A stretch of 64,000 bases of DNA from Heterodontus francisci (Eukaryota): assembly GCF_036365525.1 (NCBI RefSeq), contig NC_090399.1, positions 51,988,430 to 52,052,429 on the forward strand, in the 5' to 3' direction. Under the pieces are notes generated by a model, which saw only the letters and a program-made list of their open reading frames with translations, was not told the origin of the DNA and did no database searches. Below are positions 5,311 through 64,000 of the stretch, in pieces. A program made the translations under genes and the position numbers. Position 1 is the first letter of the stretch, and the number at the start of each line of letters is the position of its first letter.

Positions 5311-5456
5311 AACCTGAGGTACCTGAGGAAAAGTCTGGTCCTGGGACAGTGATCTGTGCTCTGGGACTCACCCTGGGAATCATCAGCGCTGTTGTAGGGA
5401 TCATCTTACTGATCAAAGAGAGACAACGGCTGCAAGCTCAGCAACAAGGGATCTAG
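5311..5456 (+). CDS. MHC class II alpha chain, connecting peptide/transmembrane/cytoplasmic exon (last coding exon; upstream exons lie outside the window)
   Basis: Acceptor ...tcttgtatttttctatacag|, phase 1. Translation (E)PEVPEEKSGPGTVICALGLTLGIISAVVGIILLIKERQRLQAQQQGI* has the class II alpha TM signature C-x-L-G-L-x-x-G-x(6)-G. TAG at 5454-5456 is followed by donor GG|GTAAGT at 5458/5459. Matches shark class II alpha C-termini as I recall them. Confidence 0.93.
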
Positions 5457-5839: not shown

Positions 5840-6230
5840 CAGAAGAACAGTAACAATCTCTATCTTCTGATAACAGTATCCTCAGAAGAACAGTAACAAT
5901 CTCTGTATCTTCTGATAACAGTATCCTCAGAAGAGCAGTAACAATCTCTGTATCTTCTGATAACAGTATCCTCAGAAGAGCAGTAACAATCTCTGTATCT
6001 TCTGATAACAGTATCCTCAGAAGAGCAGTAACAATCTCTGTATCTTCTGATAACAGTATCCTCAGAAGAGCAGTAACAATCTCTGTATCTTCTGATAACA
6101 GTATCCTTAGAAGAGCAGTAACGATCTCTGTATCTTCTGATAACAGTATCCCCAGAAGAACAGTAACAATCTCTGTATCTTCTAATAACAGTATCCTCAG
6201 AAGAACAGTAACAATCTCTGTATCTTCTAA
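5840..6230. repeat. 45-bp minisatellite, ~8.7 copies
   Basis: Unit CAGAAGA(A/G)CAGTAACAATCTCTGTATCTTCTGATAACAGTATCCT starting at 5840, 5883, 5928, 5973, 6018, 6063, 6108, 6153, 6198. Confidence 0.95.
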
Positions 6231-16400: not shown

Positions 16401-16705
16401 ACATTCAGAAACACCGGGAAACAGCATTCAGAAATACTGTGAAACAGCATTGAGAAACAGCATTCAGAAACTCCGGGAAACAACATTCAGAAACAGTATT
16501 CAGAAACACCGGGAAACAGCATTCAGAAATACTGTGAAGCAGCATTCAGAAACTCCGGGAAGCAGCATTCAGAAACACCGGGAAACAGCATTCAGAAACA
16601 CCGGGAAACAGCATTCAGAAACAGCATTCAGAAACACCGGGAAACAGCATTCAGATACAGCATTCAGAAATACTGTGAAACAGCATTCAGAAACACGGAG
16701 AAACT
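7426..16705. repeat. ~9.3-kb complex satellite of 13-bp (GCATTCAGAAACA) and 10-bp (CCGG[G/C]AAACA, CTGTGAAACA) monomers; dominant period 23 bp
   Basis: Directly visible; hundreds of monomers; explains the 1429-, 875- and 828-aa ORFs. Confidence 0.98.
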
Positions 16706-19100: not shown

Positions 19101-19419
19101 GCAAAGCCCTGCTGGATAATAATGGAGGTCCCTATCGCACAAGCCTCAATGTTAACTCTGAGCAGCAATCCAGCTGGAGGGGCTCGAGGTGAGCAGCAAG
19201 TCCCCCTAACCTCAGCAGCATGAAGCCCGGGAAGCTTTAACACCCAGACCTCCTTTGCATCTCCACTGAACCTGGTAGCAGATGGAATTAAGTATGGCAA
19301 AAAACCTCCAGCCAGAGCCATAGATCTTCAGCAGTTGGGTAAGTTCCGGGGAGCAGGTTTTGGAAGGGTCATGTGATCAGTCTCTCCTGATTCCCCGATG
19401 CTTTACTGCGTAGAGGTCC

Positions 19420-20275
19420 AGATCCCCAATCTGTGCTGATTCCTGATGGTTTACTGGGTAAAGGCCCCGATCCCCAGTCTGTGCTGATTCCTGATGGTTT
19501 ACTGGGTAAAGGTCCCGATCCCCAGTCTGTGCTGATTCCTGATGGTTTATTGGGTAAAGGTCCCGATCCCCAGTCTGTGCTGATTCCTGATGGTTTATTG
19601 GGTAAAGGTCCCGATCCCCAGTCTGTGCTGATTCCTGATGGTTTATTGGGTAAAGGTCCCGATCCCCAGTCTGTGCTGATTCCTGATGGTTTACTGGGTA
19701 AAGGTCCCGATCCCCAGTCTGTGCTGATTCCTGATGGTTTATTGGGTAAAGGTCCCGATCCCCAGTCTGTGCTGATTCCTGATGGTTTATTGGGTAAAGG
19801 TCCCGATCCCCAGTCTGTGCTGATTCCTGATGGTTTACTGGGTAAAGGTCCCGATCCCCAGTCTGTGCTGATTCTTGATGGTTTACTGGGTAAAGTTCCC
19901 GATCCCCAGTCTGTGCTGATCCCTGATGGTTTACCGGGTAAAGTTCCCGATCCCCAGTCTGTGCTGATCCCTGATGGTTTACCGGGTAAAGGCCCCGATC
20001 CCCAGTCTGTGCTGATCCCTGATGGTTTACCGGGTAAAGGCCCCGATCCCCAGAGTGTGCTGATTCCTGATGGTTTACCGGGTAAAGGCCCCGATCCCCA
20101 GTCTGTGCTGATCCCTGATGGTTTACCGGGTAAAGGTCCCGATCCCCAGTCTGTGCTGATCCCTGATGGTTTACCGGGTAAAGGTCCCGATCCCCAGTCT
20201 GTGCTGATCCCTGATGGTTTACCGGGTAAATGTCACGATCCCCAGTCCGTGCTGATCCCTGATGGTTTACTGGGC
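19420..20275. repeat. 48-bp minisatellite, ~18 copies
   Basis: Unit GATCCCCAGTCTGTGCTGAT[T/C]CCTGATGGTTTA[C/T][T/C]GGGTAAAGGTCCC; produces the 16-aa repeat ORFs on both strands. Confidence 0.97.
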
Positions 20276-21556: not shown

Positions 21557-23908
21557 CAGATTGAGTGAATGGACAAAACTGTGGAAAAAGGATTACAATG
21601 TAAGTGTGAAGCTATCCATTGCAAAACAAAAGAGGATAGATCCAAGTATTATTTAAATGGTGAAAAGCTAGGAACAGTAGAGGTCCCAACAGATTTCTGC
21701 GTCCATGTGCATAGATCATTAAAGTGTAGTAGTCAGGTGCAAAAAGTAATCAGAAACGCGAATTGAACTAGAGGACCAGAATGTAAAGGGGAGGAGGTTT
21801 TTCTACAGCTATACAAAGCCCTGGTTAGGCCACATCTGCACTACTGTGTACATTTCTGGGCACCACACCTTTAGAAAGGATATATTGGCCTTGGAAAGAG
21901 CACAGCATAGATTCAGCAAAATGGCACCAGGACTCCAACGGTTAGAGTATGAGGAACGATTAAATAAATTAGCCTTTTATTCCATGGAATATAGAAGGTT
22001 AAGAGGCAATTTAATTGAGATTTTTACGATTTTGAAAGGATTTGATAGGGTCGATAGAGAGAATTGTTCTCCACTGGTGAGGCAGTCTAGAACAAGGAGA
22101 CATAACCCTCAAATCAGAGCCAGGCCATTCAGAAGAGAAATTAGGAAACACCTCTTCACACAAAGGCATAAGGAGGGAGGAAGTGTTGGGTATTCTAAAA
22201 GGCATTACGGTGGACAAGTCCCCAGGTCCGGATGGGATCTATCCCAGGTTACTGAGGGAAGCGAGAGAGGAAATCGCTGGGGCCTTAACAGATATCTTTG
22301 CAACATCCTTAAACATGGGTGAGGTCCCGGAGGACTGGAGAATTGCTAATGTTGTCCCCTTGTTTAAGAAGGGTAGCAGGGATAATCCAGGTAGTTATAG
22401 ACCGGTGAGCCTGACGTCAGTGGTAGGGAAGCTGCTGGAGAAGATACTGAGGGATAGGATCTATTCCCATTTGGAAGAAAATGGGCTTATCAGTGATAGG
22501 CAACATGGTTTTGTGCAGGGAAGGTCATGTCTTACCAACTTAATAGAATTCTTTGAGGAAGTGACAAAGTTGATTGATGAGGGAAGGGCTGTAGATGTCA
22601 TATACATGGACTTCAGTAAGGCGTTTGATAAGGTTCCCCATGGTAGGCTGATGGAGAAAGTGAAGGCGCATGGGGTCCAAGGTGTACTAGCTAGATGGAT
22701 AAAGAACGGGCTGGGCAACAGGAGACAGAGAGTAGCAGTAGAAGGGAGTTTCTCAAAATGGAGACGTGTGACCAGTGGTGTTCCACAGGGATCCGTGCTG
22801 GGACCACTGTTGTTTGTGATATACATAAATGATTTGGAGGAAAGTATAGGTGGTCTGATTAGCAAATTTTCAGACGACACTAAGATTGGTGGAGTCGCAG
22901 ATAGTGAAGGGGGCTGTCAGAGAATACAGCAGAATATAGATAGATTGGAGAGTTGGGCAGAGAAATGGCAGATGGAGTTCAATCAGGGCAAATGCGAGGT
23001 GATGCATTTTGGAAGATCCAATTCAAGAGTGAACTATACAGTAAATGGAAAAGTCCTGGGGAAAATTGATATACAGAGAGATTTGGGTGTTCAGGTCCAT
23101 TGTTCCCTGAAGGTGGCAACGCAGGTCAATAGAGTGGTCAAGAAGGCATATGGCATGCTTTCCTTCATCGGACGGGGTATTGAGTATAAGAGTTGGCAGG
23201 TCATGTTACAGTTGTATAGGACTTTGGTTCGGCCACATTTGGAATACTGCGTGCAGTTGTGGTCGCCACATTACCAAAAGAATGTGGATGCTTTGGAGAG
23301 GGTGCAGAGGAGGTTCACCAGGATGTTGCCTGGTATGGAGGGTGCTAGCTATGAAGAGAGGTTGAGTAGATTAGGATTATTTTCATTAGAAAGACGGAGG
23401 TTGAGGGGGGACCTGATTGAGGTGTACAAAATTATGAGAGGTTGGATAGCAAGAAGCTTTTTCCCAGAGTGGATGATTCAATTACTAGGGGTCACGAGTT
23501 CAAAGTGAGAGGGGAAAAGTTTAGGGGGGACATGCGTGGAAAGTTCTTTACGCAGAGGGTGGTGGGTGCCTGGAACGCGTTGCCAGCGGAGGTGGTAGAC
23601 GCAGGCACGATAGCGTCTTTTAAGATGTATCTAGACAGATACATGAATGGGCAGGAAGTAAAGAGATACAGGCCCTTAGAAAATAGACGACATGTTTAGA
23701 TAGAGGAGCTGGATCGGCGCAGGCTTGGAGGGCCGAAGAGCCTGTTCCTGTGCTGTATTTTTCTTTGTTCTTTGTTTTTTTTGTTTGTTCAAAGGATGGC
23801 AGAAGTGTGGAGCTCTCTCTCACAAAAAAGCAGTATATGCTAGCTCAATTAATAAGTTTAAATCTGAAATGGATAGATTTTTGCTAGACAAGCATATAAT
23901 GGGATATG
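21557..23908 (+). mobile_element. Old CR1 3' portion (21557-22166, resuming 23790-23908 and 24628-24710), host to nested insertions
   Basis: RKDILALERAQHRF and RRLRGNLIEIF; continues after the insertion. Confidence 0.8.
22167..23789 (+). mobile_element. Young 5'-truncated CR1 with an open 441-aa RT region
   Basis: ORF 22183-23508 with KSPGPDG, YRPVSLTS, YMDFSKAFD, GVPQGSVLGP, KFSDD; TTCTTTG tail; CAAAGG at 22161-22166 and 23790-23795 is a likely TSD. Confidence 0.93.
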
Positions 23909-42139: not shown

Positions 42140-43938
42140 TAGGAAGATAGGAACAGGAGTAGGCCATTCAGCCCCTTGAGCCTGTCCCGCCATTCAATGA
42201 GATCATGGCTGATCCGCGGCCTAACTCCATATACCTGCCTTTGGCCTATGTCCCTTAATATCTTTAATTAACAGAAATGTATCTATCTCAGATTTAAAAT
42301 TAACAACTGTTCGAGCTTCAACTGCTGTTTGTGGGAGAGAGTTCCAAACCTCTACCACCCTTTGCGTGAAGAAGTGCTTCCTAACATCTCTCCTGAACGG
42401 TCTGGTCCTAATTTTTAGACTATGCCCCCTGGTTTTAGAATCTCCAACCAGTGGAAATAGTTTATCTTTATCTAGCCTGTCTTTTCCTGTTAATATCTTG
42501 AAGACTTCGATCAGATCACCCCTTAACCTTCTAAATTCTAGCGAAAACAGGCCGAATTTGTGTAATCTCTCCTCATAACTTAACCCCTGTAATCCAGGTA
42601 TCATTCTTGTAAACCTACACTGCACTCCCTCCAAGGCCAATATATCCTTCCTAAGGTGTGGTGCCCAGAACTGCTCACAGTACTCCAAGTGGGTTCTAAC
42701 CAGGGTTTTGTACAGCTGCAGCATAACCTCTGTGTCTTTATACTCCAATCCACTAGATATAAAGGCTAGCATTCCATTAGCCTTTTTGATTATTTTCTGC
42801 ACTTGCTCGTGGCATTTTAAAGATCTATGCACCTGAACCCCCAAGTCTCTTTGGACATCCACTGTACTTAACCTCTTCCCATTTAGAACGTACCCTGCTC
42901 TATCCGTTTTTGGTCCAAAATAGATAACCTCACACTTACCCACATTGAAATCCATCTGCCACTGTTTTGCCCATTCACCTAGTCTGTCAATATCTCTTTG
43001 CAATTTTATGCTATCATCTAGACTGTCTACAATGCCGCCTAACTTTGTATCATCAGCAAATTTGGATAAATGACTTACTATGCCATCATCCAAGTCAATA
43101 ATGAATAATGTGAATAATTGAGGCCCCAACACAGATCCTTGTGGACACCACTAGTCACATCCTGCCAATCGGAGTACTTACCCATTATCCCCACTCTCTA
43201 TCGCCTACCACTCAATCAACTTCCTAACCATGTCAATAATTTGCCCTCAATTCCATGGGCTTCTACCTTAGTTAACAGTCTCTTATGTGGGACTTTATCA
43301 AATGCCTTCTGGAAGTCCATATAAATAACATCCATAGACATTTCCCTGTCCACTACCTTAGTCACCTCTTCAAAACAGTCAATGAGATTTGTCAGGCATG
43401 ACCTTCCCGTCATGAATCCATGCTGGCTGTCCCTGATTAACTGAAATTTTTCTAGGTGTTTAGTCACCCTATCCTTGATTATAGACTCCAGCAACTTCCC
43501 CACCACAGATGTCAGGCTAACTGGTCTGTAATTTCCTTGGTTCCCCCTTTCACCCTTCTTAAAAAGTGGAGTGACATGTGTAACTTTCCAATCCAGAGGG
43601 ACCACTCCTGAATCTAGAGAACTCTGAAAGACTATAGTTAGGGCATCTACAATGTGCTCCCCTACTTCCTTTAACACCCTCAGATGGAAACCGTCAGGTC
43701 CTGGGGATTTCTCACTCTTTAGTTCCATTAATTTCCTTGTTACTGATGTTTTATTTACGTTAATTGTATTAAGTCCCTGTCCCCTAGCGGCTATTAATTT
43801 TTTTGGGACTTCCAGCAAGTTATCCTCCTTTTCAACTGTAAATACTGAGGCAAAATAATTGTTCTACATGTCTGCCATTTCCCCATTATCAATGACAATA
43901 TCTCAATTTTCAGCTTTTAGTGGGTCTACATTGCTCTT
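42140..43938 (-). mobile_element. CR1 LINE with a well-preserved RT region
   Basis: ORFs 43216-43818 and 42221-43132 (KSPGPDG, YMDFQKAFD, KFADDTKLGG). Confidence 0.93.
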
Positions 43939-44807: not shown

Positions 44808-45184
44808 CTTTTTTTTTTATTTCCAAAATATACTTTATTCACAAAAATCTGTAAAAATTACATTCCCAAACAGTTTCAAACAGCACCAAAAAATACAAAC
44901 ATTGCAAGGCAGATCAGTTTCCTTCAGTACAATCATGGGTTGCTCCACAACCCTTCGATTTCACCTTTGTCATGCCAATTACATTTTTACATTCACAGCA
45001 AATGAAAATTTTCCCGATACAGTTCGAGGGGTTTCCCATGGATCCAGCCCCGCAGTTCACCTTGGTGGGGGAGGGGAACCTTACACAGTGGTCTTTCCCC
45101 ATTGAGCCTTTGCTGCGGCTGCCCCAAGCTTTAGTGCGTCCCTCAGCACGTAGTCCTGGACCTTGGAATGTGCCAGTCTGCAAT
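44808..45184 (-). mobile_element. Tx1/L1-like LINE 3' end with poly(A)
   Basis: Minus translation CRLAHSKVQDYVLRDALKLGAAAAKAQWGKTTV*; AATAAA and poly(A) on the minus strand. Confidence 0.65.
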
Positions 45185-45270
45185 TTTACTGAAACGTTAA
45201 CTCTGTTCTCTTCCCCACAAATGTTACATAACCTGTCGATAATGAATTGACTTCGGTTCTTATTGCTTCA

Positions 45271-45580
45271 GTTCCGCCAGGTAACAGGTGACGAAAATTC
45301 CAGAATTCTTATTGGTTCTTCATGCCGCCCCTGGCTATGGTTGGTCACTTTTCGTCTACTCCTGACATTGATATTTTTTCTTCGGCCGAGCCTGATTGGT
45401 CACGGTTTGCCTTTTCCTGATTGGTCACCTTTCTCAGGGCTCTGATTGGCCTTTGTTTTTCTCGTCCTGATTGGTCACTTTCCCTGTCACTGCTTGGTCA
45501 CTTTTTTGCTGTATTTGATTGGTCACTTTGTGCTAGACGCTGATTGGTCGCTCCATGTCCGCTCTTTATTTAAAGGCCGT
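45271..45580 (+). promoter_or_regulatory. MHC class II-type promoter: X1/X2-like box, array of Y (CCAAT) boxes, TATA box
   Basis: CCAGGTAACAGGTGACG (45277-45293); ATTGG cores in units at 45308, 45392, 45417, 45442, 45467, 45515, 45540 plus degenerate units at 45337, 45364, 45490; TATTTAAA at 45567-45574; CpG-rich. Confidence 0.8.
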
Positions 45581-45619
45581 TCCATTTCCCGCTTCCGCAT
45601 TTACATCTCCAGTCCCGCA

Positions 45620-45722
45620 ATGTCTGTGTTCCAGGCTGCTCAACTGCGCTCCTTGTGGATCAGGATCTCGCTCATCATCTGTACTGCGATCATCTTCAAT
45701 GGAGAGAGGGAGAGCGGGGTCG
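45620..45722 (+). CDS. Exon 1 (signal peptide) of a probable MHC class II beta chain
   Basis: ATG 45 bp after TATA; MSVFQAAQLRSLWIRISLIICTAIIFNGERESGV(G) hydrophobic leader; phase-1 donor G|GTAAGT at 45722/45723; IFNGER resembles shark class II beta leaders as I recall them; Y-box promoter and neighbouring class II alpha gene. Exon 2 not found in the window. Confidence 0.75.
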
Positions 45723-45871
45723 GTAAGTAACCGAGGGGATGCCCGGGGCTGGGAAGGAGCGGGGTCGGGAAGAAACCGAGGGGATGCCCGGGGCTGGGAA
45801 GGAGCGGGGTCGGGAAGAAACCGAGGGGATGCCCGGGGCTGGGAAGGAGCGGGGTCGGGAAGAAACCGAGG
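45712..45871. repeat. 45-bp GC-rich tandem repeat, ~3.5 copies, spanning the exon 1 donor
   Basis: GAGCGGGGTCG starts at 45712, 45757, 45802, 45847. Confidence 0.95.
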
Positions 45872-46370
45872 AAAGTAAGTGAGGTCCAGTAATAATCCTC
45901 TCTCGGGGCCAGGCTCCGGAGCTTTGGGCTATTTGCCAGCAATCCTGATGTTTTAACCTTGGATGTTCCTGATTTTTGTAAGTTGGTTTATTGGTCGTGT
46001 ACATTCTCATAACAATCCTCCTTTAAAAGAGACCTCATTTCCTACACTGCACAGTTAGGATGAAGTGTTTCCCCTTGATAGTAAGAAACTTGAATCCATT
46101 TCGCATGAGTATTTTGGTTTAACTTGTATTGCTTTGCCAAAGCTATTGTGCAGGTACAGCAAACAATTAAGAAGGCAAATAGTATGTTGGTCTTTCTTGT
46201 AAGAGGATTTGAGTGCAAGAGTATAGATGTCTTATGGCAATTATATAGAGCCTTCATGAGACTGCAACTGGAGTATTATGTACAGTTTTGGTCTCCTTCT
46301 CCAAAGGATATACTTCCCATAGAGACAGTGCAATGATTGTTCACCAGCCTAATTCCTGGATGAAGGGATT

Positions 46371-46698
46371 ATTTATTTATTTAGAGATACAGCACTGAAA
46401 CAGGCCCTTTGGCCCACCAAGTCTGTGCTGACTGTCAACCACCCATTTATACTAATCCTACACTAACCCCATATCCCTACCACACTCCCACTTGTCCCTA
46501 TATTCCCCTACCACCTACCTATACTAGGGGCAATTTACCTATCAACCTGCAAGACTTTGGCTGTGGGAGGAAACTGGAGCACCTGGTGGAAACCCATGCA
46601 GACACAGGGAGAACTTGCAAACTCCACACAGGCAGTATCCAGAATTGAACCTGGGTCACTGGAGCTGTGAGGCTGCGGTGCTGACCACGGTGCCACTG
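46371..46698 (-). mobile_element. HE1/V-SINE-like SINE
   Basis: Reverse complement of the 962-1300 family. Confidence 0.88.
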
Positions 46699-46720
46699 TT
46701 CTGCCCAAAATGGACATTGC

Positions 46721-47109: not shown

Positions 47110-47442
47110 GGGTGGTGCAGTGGTTAGCACCGCAGCCTCACAGCTCCAGTGACCTGGGTTCGATTCTGGGTACTGCCTGTGTGGAGTTTGCAAGTTCTCC
47201 CTGTGTCTGTGTGGGTTTCTGTTGGGTGCTCTGGTTTCCTCCCACAGCCAAACACTTGCATGTTGATAGGTAAATTGGCCATTGTAAATTGCCCCTAGTG
47301 TAGGTAGGTGGTAGGAGAATGGTGGCAACATGGTAAGGAATATGGGATTAATGTAGGATTAGTATAAATGGGTGGTTGTTAGGCCCTTCAACCCACTGAG
47401 TCTGTGCTGACTGTCAGTGCTGTATCTCTCTGACTATGACTA
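47110..47442 (+). mobile_element. HE1/V-SINE-like SINE (rearranged tail)
   Basis: A-box, B-box GGTTCGATTC and central domain. Confidence 0.85.
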
Positions 47443-47859: not shown

Positions 47860-50800
47860 ATATCATTACAGCACAGAAGGAAGTAATTTGGCCTGTTATA
47901 TTTGCTAACTGTAAGAGTAACACAAATACAACAGCCCTGCCCTTTGCCCATAGTCCTGCAATTTCTTTTCAGGTTTGTGTCTGATTCCCTTTTGAAAACC
48001 ATGGTTGAATTTGCCTCCCCCACTTTCAGGCAGTGCATTCCAGATCTTAACCACTCTCTGTTAAATTTCCTCATCTGTTGGTTCTTTTGCTGTTAACTCA
48101 GTGTTGTCTATTTCTTGACCCTTCTGTTACTGAACACTTTCTCCCTACATACTCAGTCTAGACCTCATGATTTTGAACACCTCTGAAATTTCTCAACCTT
48201 CTCTTTAAGAAGCAATCCCAGCTTCTTCAATCTATTGACATAGTTGCGGTCCCTTATCCCTAGAACCATTCTCATAAAGCTCTGCTCTCTTTCCTAAAGT
48301 GTGGTGCCCAGAATTGGACACAATAGTCCAGTAGGGGCCAAAACTCTGTTTTCTCTGCCTCCATTTATAATGCTCAGGATCCAAGATACCTTTAATCAAA
48401 TCCTCAACCTTCCTTGCCACCTTCAAGGGTTTGTGCACATATACCCTGGCTTTCTGTTCCTGAACTTCCTTTAGAATGTAACCCTTTTTGTATTGCTGCT
48501 TTGTAAGAATTAAAGATGAATCATTTCACATTTCTCTGAAACTGGATCTGCCATACATTCACCCATTTCACTAGCTTGTCTACATCCTTGTGAAATCTAT
48601 CACTATCCTCCTCAGTTCCAACTTTTGTCACCTGCAAACCTTGGGTGTGCAGGCACATTCTAAATTAAGCTATTAATATAGATCAACAAAAGCAACAGTC
48701 CTTGTACTGACCCCTGCAGAACAAAACTATCTTCCTCCAGTCCAAAAAATCAACTGTTCACTACTGTTTCTTGTCCCTCAGCTAACTTCATATCTATGCT
48801 GGTCTGGCAGCATCTGGAGAGAAGCAGAGTTAGTGTTTCAGGTCTATGACCTTTCATCAGAATGGTCAAAAGTTAGAAATGTATCGGTTTTAAGCAAGTG
48901 AAGGGCTGGGGATGTACACAACAAAAGGGAAGGTGTGATAGGGTGGAAGAGATTAAATGACAAAGATCTTGAGGCTAATGGTTGTGGTGAAGGACAAAGT
49001 ATTCCAGAGTGTTATAATGGCAGAATAATGAAGCTTTGTCCAAATGCACAAATATGAAAAACCAAGTTTAAGGTGGGCACATGGTTTTTAAAAAAAAAAT
49101 GGCCAGTCATGCTCTAAAGTTGAACTGAGTCTAGCAGGCTGTCGAGTGCATAATCAGAAGTGCTGTTCCTCATGCTTGTGTTGATTGCTGGAACACTGCT
49201 GCAGGCCAAGAACTGGCTCACCCTGAACTGAAACTTCAATTTTCCTTCCAATTTCCACCCTTCTCTCCTTTTACATGGTCCATTTCTGACACTTTCCTTT
49301 CATCCCTCAATTTCTGGGATAGACTAATCATTATAAGCCCACTGACTCCCACAGCTACCTTGGCTACACTTCCCCTCTCCCTGCTTCCTGTAAGGACTCT
49401 ATTCCATTCTCCCAGTTTTTCTCTGCCACATCTGTTCTGATTATGCATCCTTCCACAAAAGTGCTTGACATGTCTCCTTTTTTCCTCAACCAAGGATTCC
49501 TTGGCACTGTGGTTGGCAGGGCCTTCAACTGTTTGACCTATTTCCTGCCCTCACCTCTTTACTGCCTCCCTCCAGAACTGTGACAGGGTTACCCTTGTCT
49601 TCACTTTCCAGCCCACCAGCCTCCATGTCCAAAGGATCATCCTGATATTTCCACTACCTCTAGCATGATGCCACTATCAAACACATCATCTCCCCTCCCC
49701 TGTCAGCATTCCAAAAGGATAATTCCCTCTGATACCCTGGTCCACTCCTCCATTGCCTCAACACTTCCCCTTCCCATGGTACCTTCCCATATGATTGCAG
49801 GAGGTGTAATACCAGCCCTTTTACCACCTCCCTCCTTACCATTCAAAGCCCCAAACACTCCTTTCAGATGAAGTAGTGATTTACCTGTACTTTCAATTTA
49901 GTATATTGTATTTGCTGATCACAATGCAGTCTCCTGTACATTGGGGAGACTGACCAGATTGGGTGACTGCTTTGCAGAACACTTCTGCTCAATCTGAAAG
50001 CATGACTCCAAGCTTCCAGTTGCTTGCCATTTCAATTCACCATCCTGCACTCATCCCCACATTTGTTCTTGACCTGTTATGTTCCAGTGAACATAATACA
50101 AGCTTGAGAAACAGCACCTCATCCAATTAGATACTCTACAGCCTTCTGGACTGAAGAGTTCAATAATTTCAAAGCATGTGAATTTTAATCATGTGACTAC
50201 CTTTAAACTTGGGTTTTCATGTTGGTTTTTGGACCGAGCTTGTTCATTATTCTCCCATTATAACACTCCCTGGGCTAATACTTTGTCTTTCATAACTGTT
50301 AGCATTCCCTTTGCCTCAAGACATCATTGTCACTTAATCTCTCCTACCCTCTGTCCTTTCACATGCTTATCTTTTGTTCTCTTCCCCATTTCTTCTTGCT
50401 TAAAACCTATTACATTTCTAACCTCTGCCAGGTCTGATGAAAGATCAGACCTGAAACATTGCTGCTCTCCATAGATGCTGCCAGTCCTGAGTATTTCCAG
50501 CATTTTCTATTTCCATTTGGTTTCCAGCATCTGCAGCATTTTGCTTTTTATATCCATGCCACTGTTGCTTTTACTCCATGGGCTTCAGCTTTGCTGGCAA
50601 GCCTAAGTGGCACTATCAAATGCCTTTTGAAAGTCCATGTACATCACATCAGCTGCCTGTTAACTCATCAAAAAACTCAATCTAGTTGAAGGCATTTGTC
50701 TTTAACAAATTCATGCTGGCTTTCCTTAATCTGCATTTGTCCAAATGACTTTTATCTAGGACAAAATTAACAGCTAAGGTTAAACTGACTGACCTGCTGC

Positions 50801-57879: not shown

Positions 57880-58016
57880 GACTCCCCTTTGATTCTTCAA
57901 ACACTTTTAAGAATCATTTCCCTTGATCCCACCTAGGTGTCTTTAATGGTCTCTTTTTGTCGAGAAACAGCCTTCAACACCCGAAGGGGTCACACTCAAT
58001 ATGTTGCCTGCTTGTG

Positions 58017-58616
58017 CTACAGGAGGGGCCCGCGGGGGCTCTGTAAAGGCATAAGTTTTGCAGGGGCTTCATTTACTTGTTTACAACAACACTTAAGCAA
58101 AAACATCAAATACAGAATTACAATCATCACTAAAAACACCAAACCCTGTACCACTGAGGTCCCTATTGAGCCCAACCAACTGGGTGCCCAACTCCATAAG
58201 GTGTGTTGGGGGTTGTTTTAGCTTTTTCACTTCCTTTCAGATGTGTTCTGCCAGATTAAAGATTTCTTTGGAGCTATTGGGACCAGAATGCTGCACCTAC
58301 ATTCTGATCAGGACACATGTACCCACCCCCTGCCTTTCTGCTAGGAAAGAATCTAAGGCCATTCAGTTCTGGAGTCCTACTGTGTGGATAGCTACCAACT
58401 GGCACGTGTGCACATACCCAACAGCTGGAGAGGTTAGCTTCTTTGGTATATGTATAGGTCATATAAAGGAGAGTTAACATGTAATTCCCTGGACACTTGA
58501 TTAGTTCCCCCATGTGGACAAGTTTGGTTAGTCAAAAGTGAGCGACTACTTAAAATACATGCAAAGAAGATAATAAAAATTCTGAACATAGCAGCAATTA
58601 ATTGGCATTCAATCAC
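58017..58616 (-). pseudogene. env: ERV env remnant (gamma-type SU start fused to the TM anchor; large internal deletion)
   Basis: Signal MFRIFIIFFACIL; ANLSSCWVCAHVP; then LWSWAPSWLGSIGTSVVQGLVFLVMIVILYLMFLLKCCCK. Confidence 0.8.
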
Positions 58617-61600
58617 AGGTCGCTCATTTTATGTGAGGCGTGTAACCAGGCTTTCTTTCCTTCCACCTTAACTGCTGACTGGGTGGTCAGTAGCACTTGG
58701 AAAGGTCCCTCACACTTGGCGCCCAAAGGTTCTTTGTGTATTTTCTTCACGTAGACCCAGATTCCTGGGACGATGTCGTGCCCTCCTTCTGGGTCACCCC
58801 AGGCTGCCAATACCTGTAAGGAAGCAGAACTGATGGAGTTTGTTAGGTTCTGGCTATATTCTAGTAAAGCATCGCTCATCAGGTGACTATCAGCTTTTCG
58901 CAGATCAATTGTTCCTGGTAAAGACATGGGGCTCTGTTATTTCAAATGGGCTCAGGCCTGTAGTTCTGTTTGGGGTCGTTCTGATACTACACAGAACTAT
59001 CGGCAATCCCTGAGGCCACTTTATTCCTTCCTGGTGATACTTGGATAGTCGCTGCTTTAGAGTCTGATTCATTCGTTCCACTTGGTCTGATGACTGGGGA
59101 TGATGAGGACAATGTAAATCCCACGTAATGTTCAGTAGTCAACTGATTTCCTGACACTGCCTGTGAAATGAGTTCCTTGGTCAGTCGTTGCTGACCAGTA
59201 CTCCCCATCTGGGGATGTAATCCTTACACAGAACCTGAGCGGTGTGGTTGGCTGTGGCTCTTCTGGCTGGGATGCCCTCTACCCATCTAGAAAATTTGTC
59301 AACGATGACTAAAATGCCAGTGTATCCCTGGCAAGGTGGGAGAGTGATATAGTCGACTTGTAAGCACTGGAATGGGCTGGCTGGAGCAGGGGCTTTTAGT
59401 TGAGGCATCATCATGGTGGGTCCTGGATTGTTTCTCTGACAGACCACACAGCAGTCAGCTACCAGCTGTGTGTTTTTTGAACCCTTGGCCCCACCGGCTT
59501 TTCTGGAACCGTGTGGTCATCTGTTGCGGGGCTAGGTGTGAATTTGTTGGGCTAAAAAGGGCATCAGCGCCTGTGGTGCGACAGGTTTCTCAGTGTCCTT
59601 TTTGTCTCCAGATGCTGTCGCCACATATCTTCATCCCTGCTTCTATCCAGATCCATTTTTCATCTTTGGAACATTCACTCTGCATCACTTGTCGGTCTTG
59701 TCAGATGGGACGCATTCAGTTTACATATTTTGTGTCTGGGGGATCACCCTGTGAGGCGGCTGCCTTGTCAGCCAGGGCATTCCCCTTTGCCTCTATGGTG
59801 TTTCATGTGGGCTTTCTATTTCAAGATAGATACCTTTTGTGGCAATTGCATGGCCTCCAGTACGTCTCTGACCTCTTTCCCATTTCAAATAGGTGTACCA
59901 GCAGCAGTGAGAAATCCTCTTTTGCGCCACAGCTGACCAAAGTCATGAGAAACTCCAAAAGCATACTGTGAGTCTGTGTAAATATTAGCTGTCTTCCCCT
60001 CTGCTATTCGACATGCTTCTGACAGGGCTCACAGGTCGGCTTGTTGGGCTGATGTCCCTGAAGGCAGGCATCCCACTTCACAACTTCATGTAAGGTTGTA
60101 ACTGCCCATCCTGCTTTCTGTGTACTGTTATCAACAAAGGATGAGCTGTCTGTGAATAGGATTAAATCTGGGTTGAGCAATGCTTCCTATGCCATTAGGG
60201 TTACCTCCTCTGTTTCTTCCATAGTCTCCACACAATAATGTTTTTCCGTCTCTTCAGGCCATGGGAGCATAGTCGCCGGATTTACCGGGCTGGCCTGGAC
60301 AATGTGGAGATTGGGAGCCTCTAGGACTGTTGTCCATTGGGTCCATCTGGCTGCTGTCACTTGGGATAGTCTGTTCATAGCAGTGTGCGGACACTTAACG
60401 GTTAACTTTTGATCTAATACTAGACCTGCAGTAGCCATCACCACTTGGCATGTAGCTTTCTTAGCTCTTAAACAACCATCCCATCCTAGGGTGACTGTCC
60501 AGTTTTTTTGAATAGTATCCAATAGGGTGGCGCAGTGGTTAGCACCACAGCCTCACAGCTCCAGCGACCCGGGTTCAATTCTGGGCACTGCCTGTGGAGT
60601 TTGCAAGTTCTCCGTGTCTGTGGGTTTCCTCTGGGTGCTCCGGTTTCCTCCCACATGCCAAAAGACTTGCAGGTTGATGGGTTAATTGGGCATTATAAAT
60701 TGCCCCTAGTATAGGTAGGTGGTAGGGAAATATAGGGACAGGTGTGGTGGGAATATGGGATTAGTGTAGCATTAGTATAAATGGGTAGTTGGTCGGCACA
60801 GACTCGGTGGGCCGAAGGGCCTGTTTCAGTGCTGTATCTCTAAACTAAACTCAAACTCTGGTCTCTGTTTGTCCCCGTGCTCCTGTGTCAGTATGGCAGT
60901 CATATATCCCTCTTTTTTTCGTGTACAAACAGGGTAAATGGTTTCCTGTTGGGGATTCCCAGGGCTGGCGCTGAGCACAAAGCCCTCTAAGTTTTTGAAA
61001 GCTTCTTGTTCTTTGGTTAGGGTAACTGATTCTTTAGAGGCCCACTTTCCCTTCAAGAGATTGGTTAATGGTCGAGTCAGCTGGGTGTAGGAGTTGATCC
61101 AGTTTCTGTTGAAGTTACACAAACCCAAAAAGGACTTAAGCTCCTGGATAGTGGTGGGCAGTTTGGCAGCTCGAATGGCGTCGGTCCTGTCCTGTCCTGG
61201 GTGAGTTCTCTCCTTCCTTTTGCAATCTTTTGTCCCAGGTACATGACCTCTCCTTCTGCTATCTGTGCTTTGTCAATACTGGCTTTGTGTCCTCTCTGAT
61301 GAAGGTGGTTCAGCAGGGTACGCAGATCTTGTTCGTGCTGTTCTTCTGTCTCAGAGGCTAACAGAATGTCGTCCATGTACTGAATGACCATGGAGTACAT
61401 GGAAGGTAACTCCCTCAAATGGTTTTGTAGGGCCATATGAAATACCGTGGGGCTGTTGTGGAAACCCTGTGGCAGGCAAGTCCAGGTGTACTGTTGTATG
61501 GTAAAGGTGAACCACAGTTGAACCTTGGGTGCCAGTGGCACCGACCAAAATCTGTTGGCTATATCGATAACAGAGAACCATTTGTGTTCTGGCTTCAGGG

Positions 61601-62310
61601 CATTAAATACCGTGGAGGGGTCAGCTACCAGAGGGGCCTTTTGATCAATACGCTGGTTAGCCTTTCTATAGTCGACAGTAAGCCACCAGATCCTGTTTGG
61701 TTTCTGTACTGGCTACACAGGGCTGTTTGAGGTACTGTGTGTTTTAACCAGCACGCCTCGCTCCTCTAGCTGTCTAATTACAGGTAGGATTCATGCAATA
61801 GATGTTTGACTGGGGTATTTAGTACAGGGTGGAGGAATCTTGTCAACGTTGCTGGTTCCATCTGGAGTAGCCCACAATCGTTCTTATCCTGGGCCCATAT
61901 TGGGTGCTCCCTCAGCTGCTCTTTCTTCAAACTTCTGATAGACCAAGTTACCTGGCTGCCTTCGAAATGCAACGAGGAGTTCAGCTAGGTGAGAACATAC
62001 ATACTGAGAAGGGCTTGTCCACGGGACCTATCCAGACCAGTGTTATCAATTCATGTGGACCAAGACCAATGCGTACGGGCTGGGCCCTCTTAATTACCAA
62101 CCCATTGCCCCCAGCTCCGTGAGCTGTTTTAGTCTTACCGTCCATCGGTAGGGAGTTTCTGTATTGAGGGAGGCACATAAATTCGGCTCCGGTATCCAAT
62201 CGGCATTCTACGTCTTGGTCGCCCACCCTCGCATTTACATACAATCCATCTTTTCTATGTTCTATTAGAGCCAGGAGAGGTGCCAAAAAAGTGAGGGAGG
62301 GCTCCTCTAG
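58613..62310 (-). pseudogene. pol: ERV pro-pol (PR, RT, tether, RNase H, IN) with multiple frameshifts and stops
   Basis: LDTGA; LPQGFHNSP...QYMDD; LILFTD, ANIYTDSQYAFG; LQVDYI...IVDKFSRWVE; EGPFQVLLTT. Confidence 0.92.
60524..60857 (+). mobile_element. HE1/V-SINE-like SINE inserted in the ERV pol
   Basis: Splits the ...KQRP|IGYYSKKLD motif. Confidence 0.9.
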
Positions 62311-63861
62311 TTTTTTGTCACATCGAGTAAGGAGGACATCTTCTGTTGCTGGGGTGTCAACTCTTTGAACTTCTCAGAGGTCGTTGCCATCAGTGGAGGG
62401 AGCCAGTTTGGGTGCCGGGTTGCATCCTTGGCGTCCTCTGCTTCGTCCTCTCTCTTTACATGTCTTAGCCCAATGGCCTTCCTTCCCGCAGTAATAACAG
62501 GGGCCGGATCGCCTATCTTGTTCTTTGTCAGGATCTTTCGGTACTCTATCCGTCTGCAGGGCTTGAAGCTTGACTCCCATATCCCTGTCCAGCTGAGCGC
62601 ATCTGTCAATTAACTGAGTATTTTACTCTTACTGCGTCCCACTCCGGTAGGGTGGCCTGCAGTATTTTAGACAATTCTGGCTTTAGTCCAGCAACAAAAG
62701 CCTGTTTTTAAGGGTCCAAAACTGGTGTCGTCTCGATCCTCTGGAGTAGGGTCATCCATCCCTGAGTATTCCACCCAGGTGGACCTAAACCTCTTCATAC
62801 TCCTGCACTTCGAGTTCTTCTGACAGGCTGCAATTTTGCCCCAGTCTGTTTTTGCAGGACAAAACTCTTGCAACCATGTGTTAATCACCATCCATCTGGC
62901 ATCTAGTAGTTGACAATCTTCACCCAAAGCAGTTTGGACCTCTCTCCTTGGCTTTCGGCTCGCTCACCTGGGCACCATTACGGTCAGAATCTGTACCCTG
63001 TCCCATGGATGGAGATTGTAAATTCCTTTTTAATTGTTCCAGCTGCTCCCATGTTTTCAGACCCCCTTTCTTCAGGTCAGGCAATCTTGTGGACCACTTG
63101 TCGATTTTTCTCGGGCAGCCGGGAAGTGTGTCCAGTACGTGTTGTGCTCGGCCGCGGTGACCTTGTTACCGTCCACAGTCCTCTTTTCTGTCTTGACCTT
63201 AACGCACTTCTGTTTAAGGGGAGCTAGTCACAGAAAAGGTAACCCATCATTGTCACTTTCTTCGCTGGAGGACTCTGCTTCCACTAGACCTGCTTCACGT
63301 AGTTGCATCTTCCGTTCCTTTTGTAACGACTTCAAACTCTGATACAAGTTAGTTGGAGGTGGTCGGCAGGGTTCGCAGAGCTGTCCCAATTCCTTCGGTT
63401 GGGTCGTCTGCTGGTCTTGTTTGTAGTTCTTTAATTTCAATCTCTAGCCTTTCCTTTTTCAGATTTTTCAATTTCTAACTGTTCCGATTTAAGCTTTTCC
63501 TTTTTCAGTTGTTCGCAGACTGCCTTCAGTTGATCCTTTGCACTAGTTAGGTCGCGATCATATTGGGCTTGTCACATAATCTCATTACGCTGCCGGATCT
63601 GGCCCATTACAGCTTGGGACCATTGGGTCTGTTCTCTCTCTCCTTTTTTAAATGGGTTGTTTTTCCCCAGACTCCCTTTATATCTTCCAAGGACCACTGT
63701 CCTGTGGAGGTGCCATATTTTTGCCCAATTTCGGTGTATATTTTAACCAGATTAAACTGTTGCTCTACATATTCTTTTAACTGCCGAAGTATTTCATCTT
63801 TGGGAACGTCAGGTGGGGCCCGCCCCCCCTTTGATGGTGGTTGGTTGCCTTCGACTGTCAT
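62307..63861 (-). pseudogene. gag: ERV gag remnant
   Basis: Charged coiled-coil-like N-terminal part, LHPWD..QIL, TDWGKIAACQ capsid-like motif, single zinc knuckle CYYCGKEGHWAKTC; 5' LTR and PBS lie beyond the window. Confidence 0.85.
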
Positions 63862-64000
63862 TTTATCAATTCGAGTAGGGAAGTAGGTCTCGAGCCATTA
63901 GGCTTTTCGGCCGAGTAGGTATTTCGTCAAATACCGCCAAGTTAGACTCCTATAAAAAGGCCTCGAGCTGCAAAAGAATTCTGAATCGCGTGGCAGGGAA

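What the first reader, a model, noticed from the sequence alone, without database searches (positions are those of the whole stretch)
45308..45574. Phased array of ~10 Y-boxes (25-bp period) in a shark MHC class II beta promoter
Seen: CTGATTGGTCAC-type units start at 45308, 45337, 45364, 45392, 45417, 45442, 45467, 45490, 45515 and 45540; the last six spacings are 25, 25, 25, 23, 25, 25. Five units are perfect CTGATTGG, and the array ends 19 bp before TATTTAAA. The spacers have diverged while core and period are kept, unlike the homogeneous minisatellites elsewhere in the window, which suggests selection. Known: mammalian class II promoters have a single Y box bound by NF-Y, whose footprint is roughly 25 bp. 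Inference: a close-packed NF-Y array that could exclude nucleosomes, give strong or partly CIITA-independent expression, or act as a copy-number rheostat. This is my best candidate for an undescribed regulatory system here.
Basis: partly seen in the sequence, partly recalled or inferred. Interest (0 to 1): 0.85.

Follow-up and report, generated by a model that had tools for sequence, protein, structure and literature searches.

The report
Phased CCAAT-box array, shark class II promoter
Just upstream of an expressed shark MHC class II beta-type gene lies a row of strong binding sites for the general transcription factor NF-Y, spaced 25 bases apart and kept intact while the DNA between them has scrambled. 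This is an unusual, probably functional elaboration of the single "Y box" that such promoters normally carry.

Summary
CTGATTGG occurs exactly at 45392, 45417, 45442, 45467 and 45540, with spacings of 25/25/25/23/25/25, ending 19 bp before TATTTAAA. The count of about 10 Y boxes is generous. Seven units keep the obligatory ATTGG pentamer, two have one broken base (45337, 45490), and one (45364) is not credible.

The 12-nt core CTGATTGGTCAC is 86% identical between units. The spacers are 36% identical, which is what their composition alone predicts (p<1e-5 allowing for how the core was chosen).

A unique X1/X2-like box (45277-45296) sits 17 bp upstream of the first Y box. RNA-like contigs from the source animal leave the array uncovered. 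They cover exon 1 (ATG 45620), splice at 45722/45723, and run on into letters resembling the catshark class II beta exon 2 start. A class II alpha CP/TM exon lies at 5311-5440.

A contig from a second organism spans seven units at 96% identity with no indel.

Best reading: a selected multi-CCAAT NF-Y platform grown from the Y box of an S-X-Y promoter. The 25-bp pitch matches the preferred 24-27 bp double-CCAAT spacing in human ChIP-seq. NF-Y binding and function are untested. The copy-number rheostat idea is not supported. This is a new variant of a known kind.

The parts
45257..45269 (+). Y-like copy (TTCTTATTGCTTC) at the position where an S box would lie, upstream of the X box. Its status is uncertain.
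   Evidence: It is a direct repeat of 45306-45318, matching 12 of 13 bases, 49 bp apart. A match of this size is only borderline above chance.
45277..45296 (+). X1/X2-like box: CCAGGTAACAGGTG overlapping TGACGAAA (an RFX-type RGYAAC half-site followed by a CRE half-site).
   Evidence: RGYAACNGRTG occurs once in the window on either strand, at 45280-45290, with about 1 expected per window. TGACG is at 45289. The box lies 17 bp upstream of the first Y box in the canonical orientation.
45308..45319 (+). Distal Y box (CTTATTGGTTCT), the partner of the X box. The pentamer is intact but the flank is suboptimal.
45337..45348 (+). Degenerate unit ATGGTTGGTCAC. The pentamer is broken (GTTGG) but the flank is kept.
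45364..45375 (+). Putative decayed unit GACATTGATATT. It is not a credible NF-Y site.
45392..45478 (+). Four consecutive optimal inverted CCAAT boxes at 45392, 45417, 45442 and 45467, exactly 25 bp apart (CTGATTGGTCAC three times, CTGATTGGCCTT once).
45490..45501 (+). Degenerate unit CTGCTTGGTCAC, with a broken pentamer (CTTGG).
45515..45526 (+). Unit TTGATTGGTCAC, with an intact pentamer.
45540..45551 (+). TATA-proximal unit CTGATTGGTCGC, about -56 from the inferred transcription start.
45567..45574 (+). TATA-like box TATTTAAA.
45599..45606 (+). Inferred transcription start zone (initiator-like TTACATC). The position is inferred, not mapped.
   Evidence: RNA-like contig ends at 45606 and 45623 are preceded by tagmentation adapter letters, depth is 0 in 45300-45499, and the zone is 30-36 nt after the TATA box.
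45620..45722 (+). Exon 1 coding part: 34 codons plus 1 nt (phase 1), a signal-peptide-like leader. The donor is G|GTAAGT at 45723.
   Evidence: A 131-nt contig of run X7 lies on 45622-45723 with 0 differences and then runs on. The loose end behind 45723 reads GGCTTACTCCGGAAAT, which is absent from the window.
5311..5440 (+). Context: connecting-peptide/transmembrane exon of an MHC class II alpha gene, same strand, about 40 kb upstream.
   Evidence: phmmer against PDB chains: the seven best hits are all class II alpha chains, aligned at their CP/TM residues, with E from 2.8e-5 to 7e-4.

Best explanation
Positions 45208-45619 are the proximal promoter of an expressed, MHC-linked gene that is very probably a class II beta chain. 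At its distal edge it carries an X1/X2-Y module of the class II enhanceosome type.

Between that module and the TATA box, the Y box has been multiplied into a head-to-tail row with a 25-bp pitch. The row most likely arose as an ordinary 25-bp minisatellite whose unit contained the Y box. Since then the spacers have scrambled, while the 12-nt core CTGATTGGTCAC (GTGACCAATCAG on the other strand, a near-optimal NF-Y site) has been held by purifying selection in six units of the row, in addition to the distal Y box.

The proposed mechanism is inferred. Several NF-Y trimers, each a histone-fold complex, would bind side by side at the pitch that NF-Y favours for paired sites. They would coat roughly -50 to -210 and keep that stretch free of nucleosomes. 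They would fix the start site next to the TATA box and offer several docking surfaces for RFX and the class II transactivator.

Shown: the anatomy, the contrast between core and spacer, transcription and splicing of exon 1, and persistence of the array in a second organism.
Inferred: NF-Y occupancy, simultaneous binding, and the effect on chromatin and expression.
For: - Anatomy and statistics are. Core pairwise identity is 86% and spacer identity 36% (35% expected from composition). The ascertainment-aware p is below 1e-5.
- On the CCAAT strand the flanks are purine at -1 and -2, C at +1, A at +2 and G at +3. The mammalian NF-Y matrix is 10 bp, every CCAAT base is mandatory, and it prefers a purine at -1, C at +1 and a purine at +2 (PMC6843132).
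- Distances between intact pentamers are 25, 25, 25, 48 and 25. In human NF-Y ChIP-seq, double CCAAT boxes peak at 24-27 and about 36 bp, and RFX5 lands on such double modules (PMC4889920).
- The X1-type motif is unique in the window and lies 17 bp upstream of the first Y box.
- Promoter function is supported. RNA-like runs of the same animal have depth 0 over 45300-45499 and thousands over exon 1. There is an exact splice at 45722/45723, and contig 5' ends at 45606 or further downstream.
- Gene identity has four supports. Exon 1 is a 103-nt phase-1 leader. Reading the loose end by eye gives G-L-T-P-E, and its letters G+GGCTTACTCC resemble the catshark II-beta intron 1/exon 2 junction primers ...CAG|GGGCTCACA and ...TAG|GGGCTCATACC (PMC9992475). 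A class II alpha CP/TM exon lies upstream. [quoted passage not shown]
- A 205-nt contig of organism B covers 45367-45561 with 7 differences and no gap.
- A natural contrast exists. An unrelated 25-bp minisatellite with the same 12-mer in a marine contig diverges equally in core and spacer (8.3% against 7.1%), and 5 of its 13 pentamers are broken.
- NF-Y's role in nucleosome-depleted regions and start-site choice is described in PMC2677874 and PMC6624317.
Against: - There are no binding, chromatin or reporter data for any shark.
- Only one other organism was seen, at 96% identity. That conservation could simply reflect recent divergence, and the positions of its 7 differences were not listed.
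- Two units inside the row have lost the pentamer, so not every position is protected.
- The spacers are almost free of A (5 of 77). They are therefore not fully randomised, and the age of the duplications is uncertain.
- The conserved GT at -4/-3 and the T run lie outside the 10-bp NF-Y matrix, which could point to another factor.
- The beta1 and beta2 exons are not in the window. Three protein searches with the leader found nothing.
- In mammals the X-Y geometry is strict, and it is unclear how extra Y boxes 84-232 bp further on would join one enhanceosome.
Confidence: 0.6

Rival explanations
1. The array is a relic minisatellite in which only one or two boxes work. The X-linked Y box at 45308 and the TATA-proximal CCAAT at 45540 would do the job, as in the Y box plus CCAAT arrangement of mammalian beta-chain promoters (recalled, not checked). 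The other boxes would be neutral leftovers.
For: Two units have already lost the pentamer and one is unrecognisable. A 25-bp minisatellite with the same unit exists elsewhere by chance. The spacers keep a shared T/C-rich composition, so the duplications may be younger than their scrambled order suggests.
Against: Four consecutive internal units keep a perfect 8-mer while their spacers are at the random level of identity. The contrast between core and spacer survives a test that allows for choosing the best block. The neutral control array shows no such contrast.
Confidence: 0.17
2. The conserved 12-mer is read by a factor other than NF-Y, or by NF-Y together with a partner. Candidates are a protein recognising GGTCAC/GTGACC (a nuclear-receptor-like half-site), a TALE-type factor on TGATTG, or the single-strand Y-box protein YB-1.
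For: Conservation extends to TCAC and a following T run, beyond the 10-bp NF-Y matrix. Both pentamer-broken units keep GGTCAC. Composite CCAAT elements read jointly with TALE factors have been described (bioRxiv 10.64898/2026.02.16.706105, abstract only).
Against: The best-conserved columns are the pentamer and its immediate NF-Y flanks. The pitch equals the known NF-Y pair spacing. The context is an X-Y module, whose Y partner is NF-Y.
Confidence: 0.12
3. The array is a variable-number tandem repeat acting as an expression rheostat between alleles.
For: The layout is tandem, and MHC promoters are polymorphic in other species (PMC6155461).
Against: The spacers show no recent homogenisation or unequal exchange, and TRF cannot even detect the array. 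Organism B has the same seven units with no indel.
Confidence: 0.05
4. The array is part of a transposable element or LTR promoter, like the CCAAT-bearing U3 repeats of human ERV9/LTR12.
For: The window is full of LINE, SINE-like and ERV sequence, and a repeat ends at about 45207 just upstream. LTRs with paired CCAAT boxes are known (PMC4889920).
Against: There is no other copy in the window. In runs where flanking repeats draw hundreds of contigs, 45300-45499 draws none from the RNA-like runs and a single contig from organism B. No LTR ends or target duplications were noted.
Confidence: 0.03

Closest known systems
Mammalian MHC class II S-X-X2-Y enhanceosome promoter (RFX, CREB, NF-Y, CIITA)
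   Same: It has an X1-type RGYAAC..GRTG motif overlapping a CRE half-site, followed at about the canonical distance by an inverted CCAAT Y box in the same orientation. It lies upstream of a class II-type leader exon, and the proximal box sits near -56.
   Different: Mammalian promoters have one Y box, with the module within about 150 bp of the start. Here the X-Y module sits at about -290 to -320, and six further intact Y-type boxes (plus three decayed units) fill the gap at a 25-bp pitch. A clear TATA box is present. No convincing S box was found.
Multi-CCAAT NF-Y promoters (paired CCAAT boxes 24-27 or about 36 bp apart, typical of cell-cycle genes; PMC4889920)
   Same: The sites are same-strand, high-quality CCAAT boxes at 25 bp within 200 bp of the start. 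In human cells RFX5 is among the factors found on such modules.
   Different: Known cases have two boxes; I recall examples with up to about five, but did not check this. This one has six intact sites in one phased row, in an immune gene with an X box, and it is evidently born from a tandem repeat.
ERV9/LTR12 U3 tandem repeats bound by NF-Y
   Same: Tandemly repeated units each carry a CCAAT box and act as a promoter.
   Different: Those repeats are part of a dispersed retroelement and have homogeneous units. This array is single-copy at the level tested, not within an LTR, and has scrambled spacers.
Motif duplications in cetacean class II promoters (14-bp T box in dolphin DQA; PMC6155461)
   Same: A regulatory motif of a class II proximal promoter is duplicated in tandem.
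   Different: The cetacean case is a single recent duplication of a different motif. This is a many-fold, old multiplication of the Y box itself.

Membership tests
MHC class II S-X-Y promoter module | X1 box (RFX site) with an adjoining X2 (CRE-like) box | tested here: met
   GGTAACAGGTG at 45280-45290 is the only RGYAACNGRTG in the window, and TGACG overlaps it at 45289. The motif definition comes from my recall of the consensus, and the test was made after seeing the sequence.
MHC class II S-X-Y promoter module | Inverted CCAAT Y box downstream of X2 at a fixed distance (about 18-20 bp; RFX5 site to CCAAT peak at 29 bp in PMC4889920) | tested here: inconclusive
   CTTATTGG starts 17 bp after the X1 motif ends, and the middle of the pentamer is 26-28 bp from the GYAAC(AG) end. 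This is close to the mammalian spacing but 1-3 bp shorter.
MHC class II S-X-Y promoter module | S box 15-17 bp upstream of X1 | tested here: inconclusive
   Only a Y-like 13-mer copy lies at that position, at 45257-45269. There is no recognisable S consensus.
MHC class II S-X-Y promoter module | Drives an MHC class II, invariant-chain or related gene | tested here: met
   The support is indirect. Exon 1 is a spliced phase-1 leader, and the spliced-on letters resemble the catshark II-beta exon 2 start. A class II alpha exon lies 40 kb upstream. The beta1 and beta2 exons were not seen.
MHC class II S-X-Y promoter module | Occupied by RFX, CREB, NF-Y and dependent on CIITA | not testable with these tools
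   This needs ChIP and reporter assays.
Multi-CCAAT NF-Y promoter | Two or more CCAAT boxes with NF-Y-type flanks | tested here: met
   Seven pentamers are intact, and five have the full RRCCAATCAG flank pattern, judged against the matrix described in PMC6843132.
Multi-CCAAT NF-Y promoter | Inter-box distance of 24-27 or about 36 bp | tested here: met
   Distances between intact boxes in the row are 25, 25, 25, 48 and 25, against the spacings in PMC4889920.
Multi-CCAAT NF-Y promoter | Lies within about 200 bp upstream of the transcription start | tested here: met
   The boxes are at about -56 to -204 from a start inferred between the TATA box and 45606. The start site is bounded, not mapped.
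Multi-CCAAT NF-Y promoter | NF-Y bound in vivo | not testable with these tools
   No shark ChIP data are within reach.
Neutral minisatellite / VNTR | Divergence spread evenly over the unit | tested here: not met
   Non-consensus cells are 7% in the core and 43% in the spacer. The control array L001 shows 8.3% against 7.1%.
Neutral minisatellite / VNTR | Copy number varies between individuals or close species | tested here: not met
   The organism B contig spans seven units with no gap. This is a single comparison, and no population data were laid.
LTR/transposon-borne CCAAT repeats (ERV9/LTR12 type) | Part of a dispersed, multi-copy element | tested here: not met
   There is no second copy in the window. 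The RNA-like runs give no contigs over 45300-45499, although neighbouring repeats draw thousands. The whole genome was not searched.

The most novel reading that the evidence does not exclude
The row is an ancient, selectively maintained NF-Y 'pseudo-nucleosome'. Six to seven high-affinity CCAAT boxes, packed at the tightest pitch NF-Y favours, would by themselves keep a class II promoter open and fix its start site. This would be an elasmobranch solution in which an NF-Y array does part of the work that the single-Y enhanceosome plus CIITA does in mammals. It would be shared by class II beta genes across sharks and rays.
Probability: 0.25. Interest if true: 0.75.

Novelty: new variant of a known kind. 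Interest (0 to 1): 0.55.

Why it matters
Class II promoters are described as conserved in motif content and spacing across vertebrates (PMC6155461, PMC2192087). A cartilaginous-fish class II promoter that keeps the X-Y module but multiplies the Y box six-fold at the NF-Y pair spacing would show that the enhanceosome design is more plastic at the base of jawed vertebrates.

It would also offer a natural test bed for how many NF-Y trimers can sit side by side, and for whether NF-Y alone can exclude nucleosomes and set the start site. Both questions are raised but left open for human class II genes (PMC2677874). Finally, it is a clean example of a minisatellite being captured by selection as a regulatory array.

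Tried and rejected
- The beta1 and beta2 exons were sought in the window with a six-frame scan for the Ig C1 motif and for stop-free stretches. None was found. The exon 2 start read from RNA is also absent, so intron 1 exceeds 18 kb.
- phmmer of the 34-aa leader against 1.84 billion representatives gave no hit.
- A word-index search with a 41-aa reference (7 untranslated-region codons plus the leader) and with the 94-aa stop-free stretch over the array and exon 1 gave nothing.
- A text search for the leader peptide in papers gave nothing. The two shark class II papers have no useful supplements.
- Literature searches for shark or fish class II promoters with multiple Y boxes found no description. 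This shows absence from that library only.
- The scan's own notes on this genome gave titles only. None describes another Y-box array.
- The one metagenome scan for two cores 25 bp apart found a single unrelated minisatellite. I use it as a contrast, not as a relative.
- The TE/LTR origin and the rheostat idea were rejected, as set out under the rival explanations.
The reading across the exon 1/exon 2 joint was made by eye from the loose-end letters.

Full report
**What is in the sequence**

Between 45308 and 45566 the + strand carries ten roughly periodic units of the type CTGATTGGTCAC plus a T-rich spacer. An exact search finds CTGATTGG at 45392, 45417, 45442, 45467 and 45540. These are five of the nine matches in the whole window on both strands, where 4.2 are expected.

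Start-to-start distances from 45392 onward are 25, 25, 25, 23, 25 and 25. The three upstream units are spaced 29, 27 and 28. TATTTAAA follows at 45567, 19 bp after the last 8-mer.

The obligatory pentamer ATTGG (CCAAT on the other strand) is intact in seven units: 45308, 45392, 45417, 45442, 45467, 45515 and 45540. It reads GTTGG at 45337 and CTTGG at 45490. The unit at 45364 (GACATTGATA) is not a recognisable box. So 'about 10 Y boxes' should read seven intact, two broken by one base, and one decayed.

No other 300-bp stretch of the window holds more than the 7 same-strand ATTGG found here.

**Is it more than a decayed repeat?**

Tandem Repeats Finder does not report the array even at its lowest score. 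It does report the window's true minisatellites at 95-99% matches.

Among the seven phased units 45392-45540, 6 of 84 core cells depart from the consensus, against 33 of 77 spacer cells (Fisher p=1e-7). The core was chosen because it is conserved, so I also redistributed the same number of changes at random and took the best 12-column block each time. None of 100,000 trials reached the observed contrast.

Pairwise identity is 86% in the core and 36% in the spacers. The spacers' own composition predicts 35%.

A natural control turned up by accident. There core and spacer have diverged alike (8.3% against 7.1%), and 5 of 13 pentamers are broken. That is what a neutral array of this unit looks like, and the shark array looks different.

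One reservation remains. The shark spacers are almost free of A (5 of 77; the array is 10% A against 28% for the window). They are therefore not compositionally randomised, and I do not claim great age for the duplications.

**Surroundings**

A repeat that draws many contigs ends near 45207, so the unique promoter is about 410 bp long.

At its distal edge lies CCAGGTAACAGGTGACGAAA (45277-45296). The X1-type motif RGYAACNGRTG occurs only here in the 64 kb on either strand. It overlaps a CRE half-site TGACG and ends 17 bp before the first Y box, in the canonical order and orientation. That motif definition comes from my recall of the mammalian consensus, and I applied it after seeing the sequence.

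A 12-of-13 copy of the distal Y box region sits where an S box would be (45257-45269). I leave its meaning open.

Downstream of the TATA box an ATG at 45620 opens a 103-nt signal-peptide-like coding stretch. It ends in phase 1 at a consensus donor, G|GTAAGT, at 45722/45723.

**Is it a working promoter, and of what gene?**

Three small runs from the same animal as the assembly behave like RNA. Their depth over unique intron bins is 0 to about 2, and over exon 1 it is in the thousands.

- They give no depth at all over 45300-45499.
- One contig lies on 45622-45723 without a difference and then runs on.
- The loose end behind 45723 reads GGCTTACTCCGGAAAT, which is nowhere in the window.
- Contig ends at 45606 and 45623 are preceded by tagmentation adapter letters.

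The start therefore lies between 45500 and 45606. That fits a TATA-directed start near 45599-45606.

Primers that a catshark study placed on the intron 1/exon 2 junction of its class II beta genes read ...CACAG|GGGCTCACA and ...TCTAG|GGGCTCATACC (PMC9992475). Our G+GGCTTACTCC matches 7 of 9 and 8 of 11 of these exon letters, and both encode G-L-T or G-L-I-P.

Upstream on the same strand, 5311-5440 encodes a connecting-peptide/transmembrane exon. Its seven best PDB matches are all class II alpha chains, aligned at exactly that part (E from 2.8e-5 to 7e-4). Shark class II alpha and beta genes occur as linked pairs (PMC8010645).

Together these make a class II beta gene very likely; I put it at about 0.85. 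The beta1 and beta2 exons are beyond the window, and protein searches with the leader were blank.

**A second organism**

A run labelled as another organism holds a 205-nt contig that lies on 45367-45561 with 7 differences and no gap. A second contig lies on 45647-45723 with 5 differences in 77.

The seven phased units therefore exist there with the same number and spacing.

The tool did not list where the 7 differences fall. Whether they avoid the cores is unknown, and the evolutionary distance is unknown too.

**Mechanism**

On the CCAAT strand the core reads GTGA-CCAAT-CAG. The mammalian NF-Y site is a 10-bp matrix in which every base of CCAAT is mandatory, with a purine at -1, C at +1 and a purine at +2 preferred (PMC6843132). 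Five units fit this fully.

In human ChIP-seq, NF-Y-bound regions with two CCAAT boxes show preferred distances of 24-27 and about 36 bp. RFX5, the X-box factor of class II genes, is among the factors that land on such paired boxes (PMC4889920).

NF-Y is a histone-fold complex that bends DNA, competes with nucleosomes and keeps the stretch upstream of start sites nucleosome-free. At human class II promoters the enhanceosome evicts nucleosomes and thereby sets the start site, with NF-Y proposed as the key player (PMC2677874, PMC6624317).

The intact boxes here lie at about -56, -81, -129, -154, -179, -204 and -288.

The best-supported reading is a multi-NF-Y platform grown from the Y box, filling the space between the X-Y module and the TATA box. 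Its function would be to hold the promoter open and to strengthen recruitment of RFX, CIITA and the basal machinery. Everything from 'NF-Y binds' onward is inference.

**Rivals**

- Only the X-linked and the TATA-proximal boxes work and the rest are relics (0.17). The perfect internal cores argue against this.
- Another factor reads the 12-mer, suggested by conservation of TCAC and the T run outside the NF-Y matrix (0.12).
- It is a copy-number rheostat (0.05). This is contradicted by scrambled spacers and by the indel-free contig of organism B.
- It is a transposon or LTR promoter (0.03). No other copy was found in the window or in the laid runs.

**Comparison and novelty**

It works like two known things at once: the class II S-X-Y module and the multi-CCAAT promoters of cell-cycle genes.

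It is not a plain member of the first, because that family has one Y box close to the start, and here the S box and the exact X-Y distance are inconclusive. It goes beyond the second in the number of sites and in its tandem-repeat origin. ERV9/LTR12 repeats are the nearest example of tandem CCAAT units acting as a promoter, but they are transposon-borne and homogeneous.

My searches of the open literature found no description of a multiplied Y box in any class II promoter. The closest case is a single T-box duplication in dolphins (PMC6155461).

I rate it a new variant of a known kind, of moderate interest. It is real and probably selected, but it is functionally untested and the gene identity is indirect.

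The scan's earlier notes on this window (class II alpha and beta in tandem; a satellite in the alpha gene's last intron) agree with what I found. None reports this array elsewhere.

Noticed in passing
window 45712-45871: A 45-bp minisatellite (3.6 copies, 98% matches) starts inside the end of exon 1, so it duplicates the last 11 exon bases and the splice donor. Only the first copy reads GGTAAGT; the later copies read GGGAAGA. RNA-like contigs use the first donor. A further GTAAGT at 45875 would be out of phase.
   Followed up: partly
window 5311-5440 (+): Connecting-peptide/transmembrane exon of an MHC class II alpha gene (EPEVPEEKSGPGTVICALGLTLGIISAVVGIILLIKERQ). The best PDB matches are HLA-DQ and HLA-DR alpha chains at the same part. 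The alpha1 and alpha2 exons must lie before the window's start.
   Followed up: partly
window 7426-16705: A 9.3-kb satellite of 23-bp units (GAAACAGCATTCAGAAACACCGG) with higher-order 46-, 69- and 82-bp periods lies just downstream of the class II alpha transmembrane exon. Two homogeneous minisatellites lie at 5840-6228 (45 bp) and 19378-20274 (48 bp).
   Followed up: no
window 46369-46700 (+) and 47112-47400 (-), also 871-1116 and 60486-60714: These are copies of one short repeat family (peptide-like ...GRTCKLHTGS...), two of them inverted in intron 1. They draw extremely deep contigs in the RNA-like runs (summed depth 3e5-9e5), and a contig joint links the two inverted copies. Most listed differences are T in this DNA against C in the contigs. 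That pattern fits CpG decay of this copy or differences from paralogues, so I make no claim of RNA editing.
   Followed up: no
window 45019-45207: A repeat seen in many contigs at 90-95% identity ends about 45207 and bounds the unique promoter on its upstream side. Contig joints link 45207 to about 50473-50488, where another copy ends.
   Followed up: no
L001 4635-4966 (marine metagenome contig, - strand relative to the pattern): A 13-copy, 25-bp minisatellite (CTGATTGGTCACCATAACATCATTT) sits next to a cysteine-rich exon (…GCTYTCVCIDGMTGNYRCTEK) in an AT-rich eukaryote-like contig. It has the same 12-mer and period as the shark array but is homogeneous. I take it as a coincidence of a search that required both features.
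   Followed up: partly
window 22081-23505 (+), 42221-43818 (-), 58000-63900 (-): There is a long stop-free LINE reverse-transcriptase stretch of 475 aa, further reverse-transcriptase fragments, and retrovirus-like pol/gag open frames. The class II region here is heavily loaded with mobile elements.
   Followed up: no
window 45308-45566: The array is 10% A and 42% T on the sense strand. The spacers hold only 5 A in 77 positions, a composition bias that the NF-Y reading does not explain.
   Followed up: partly
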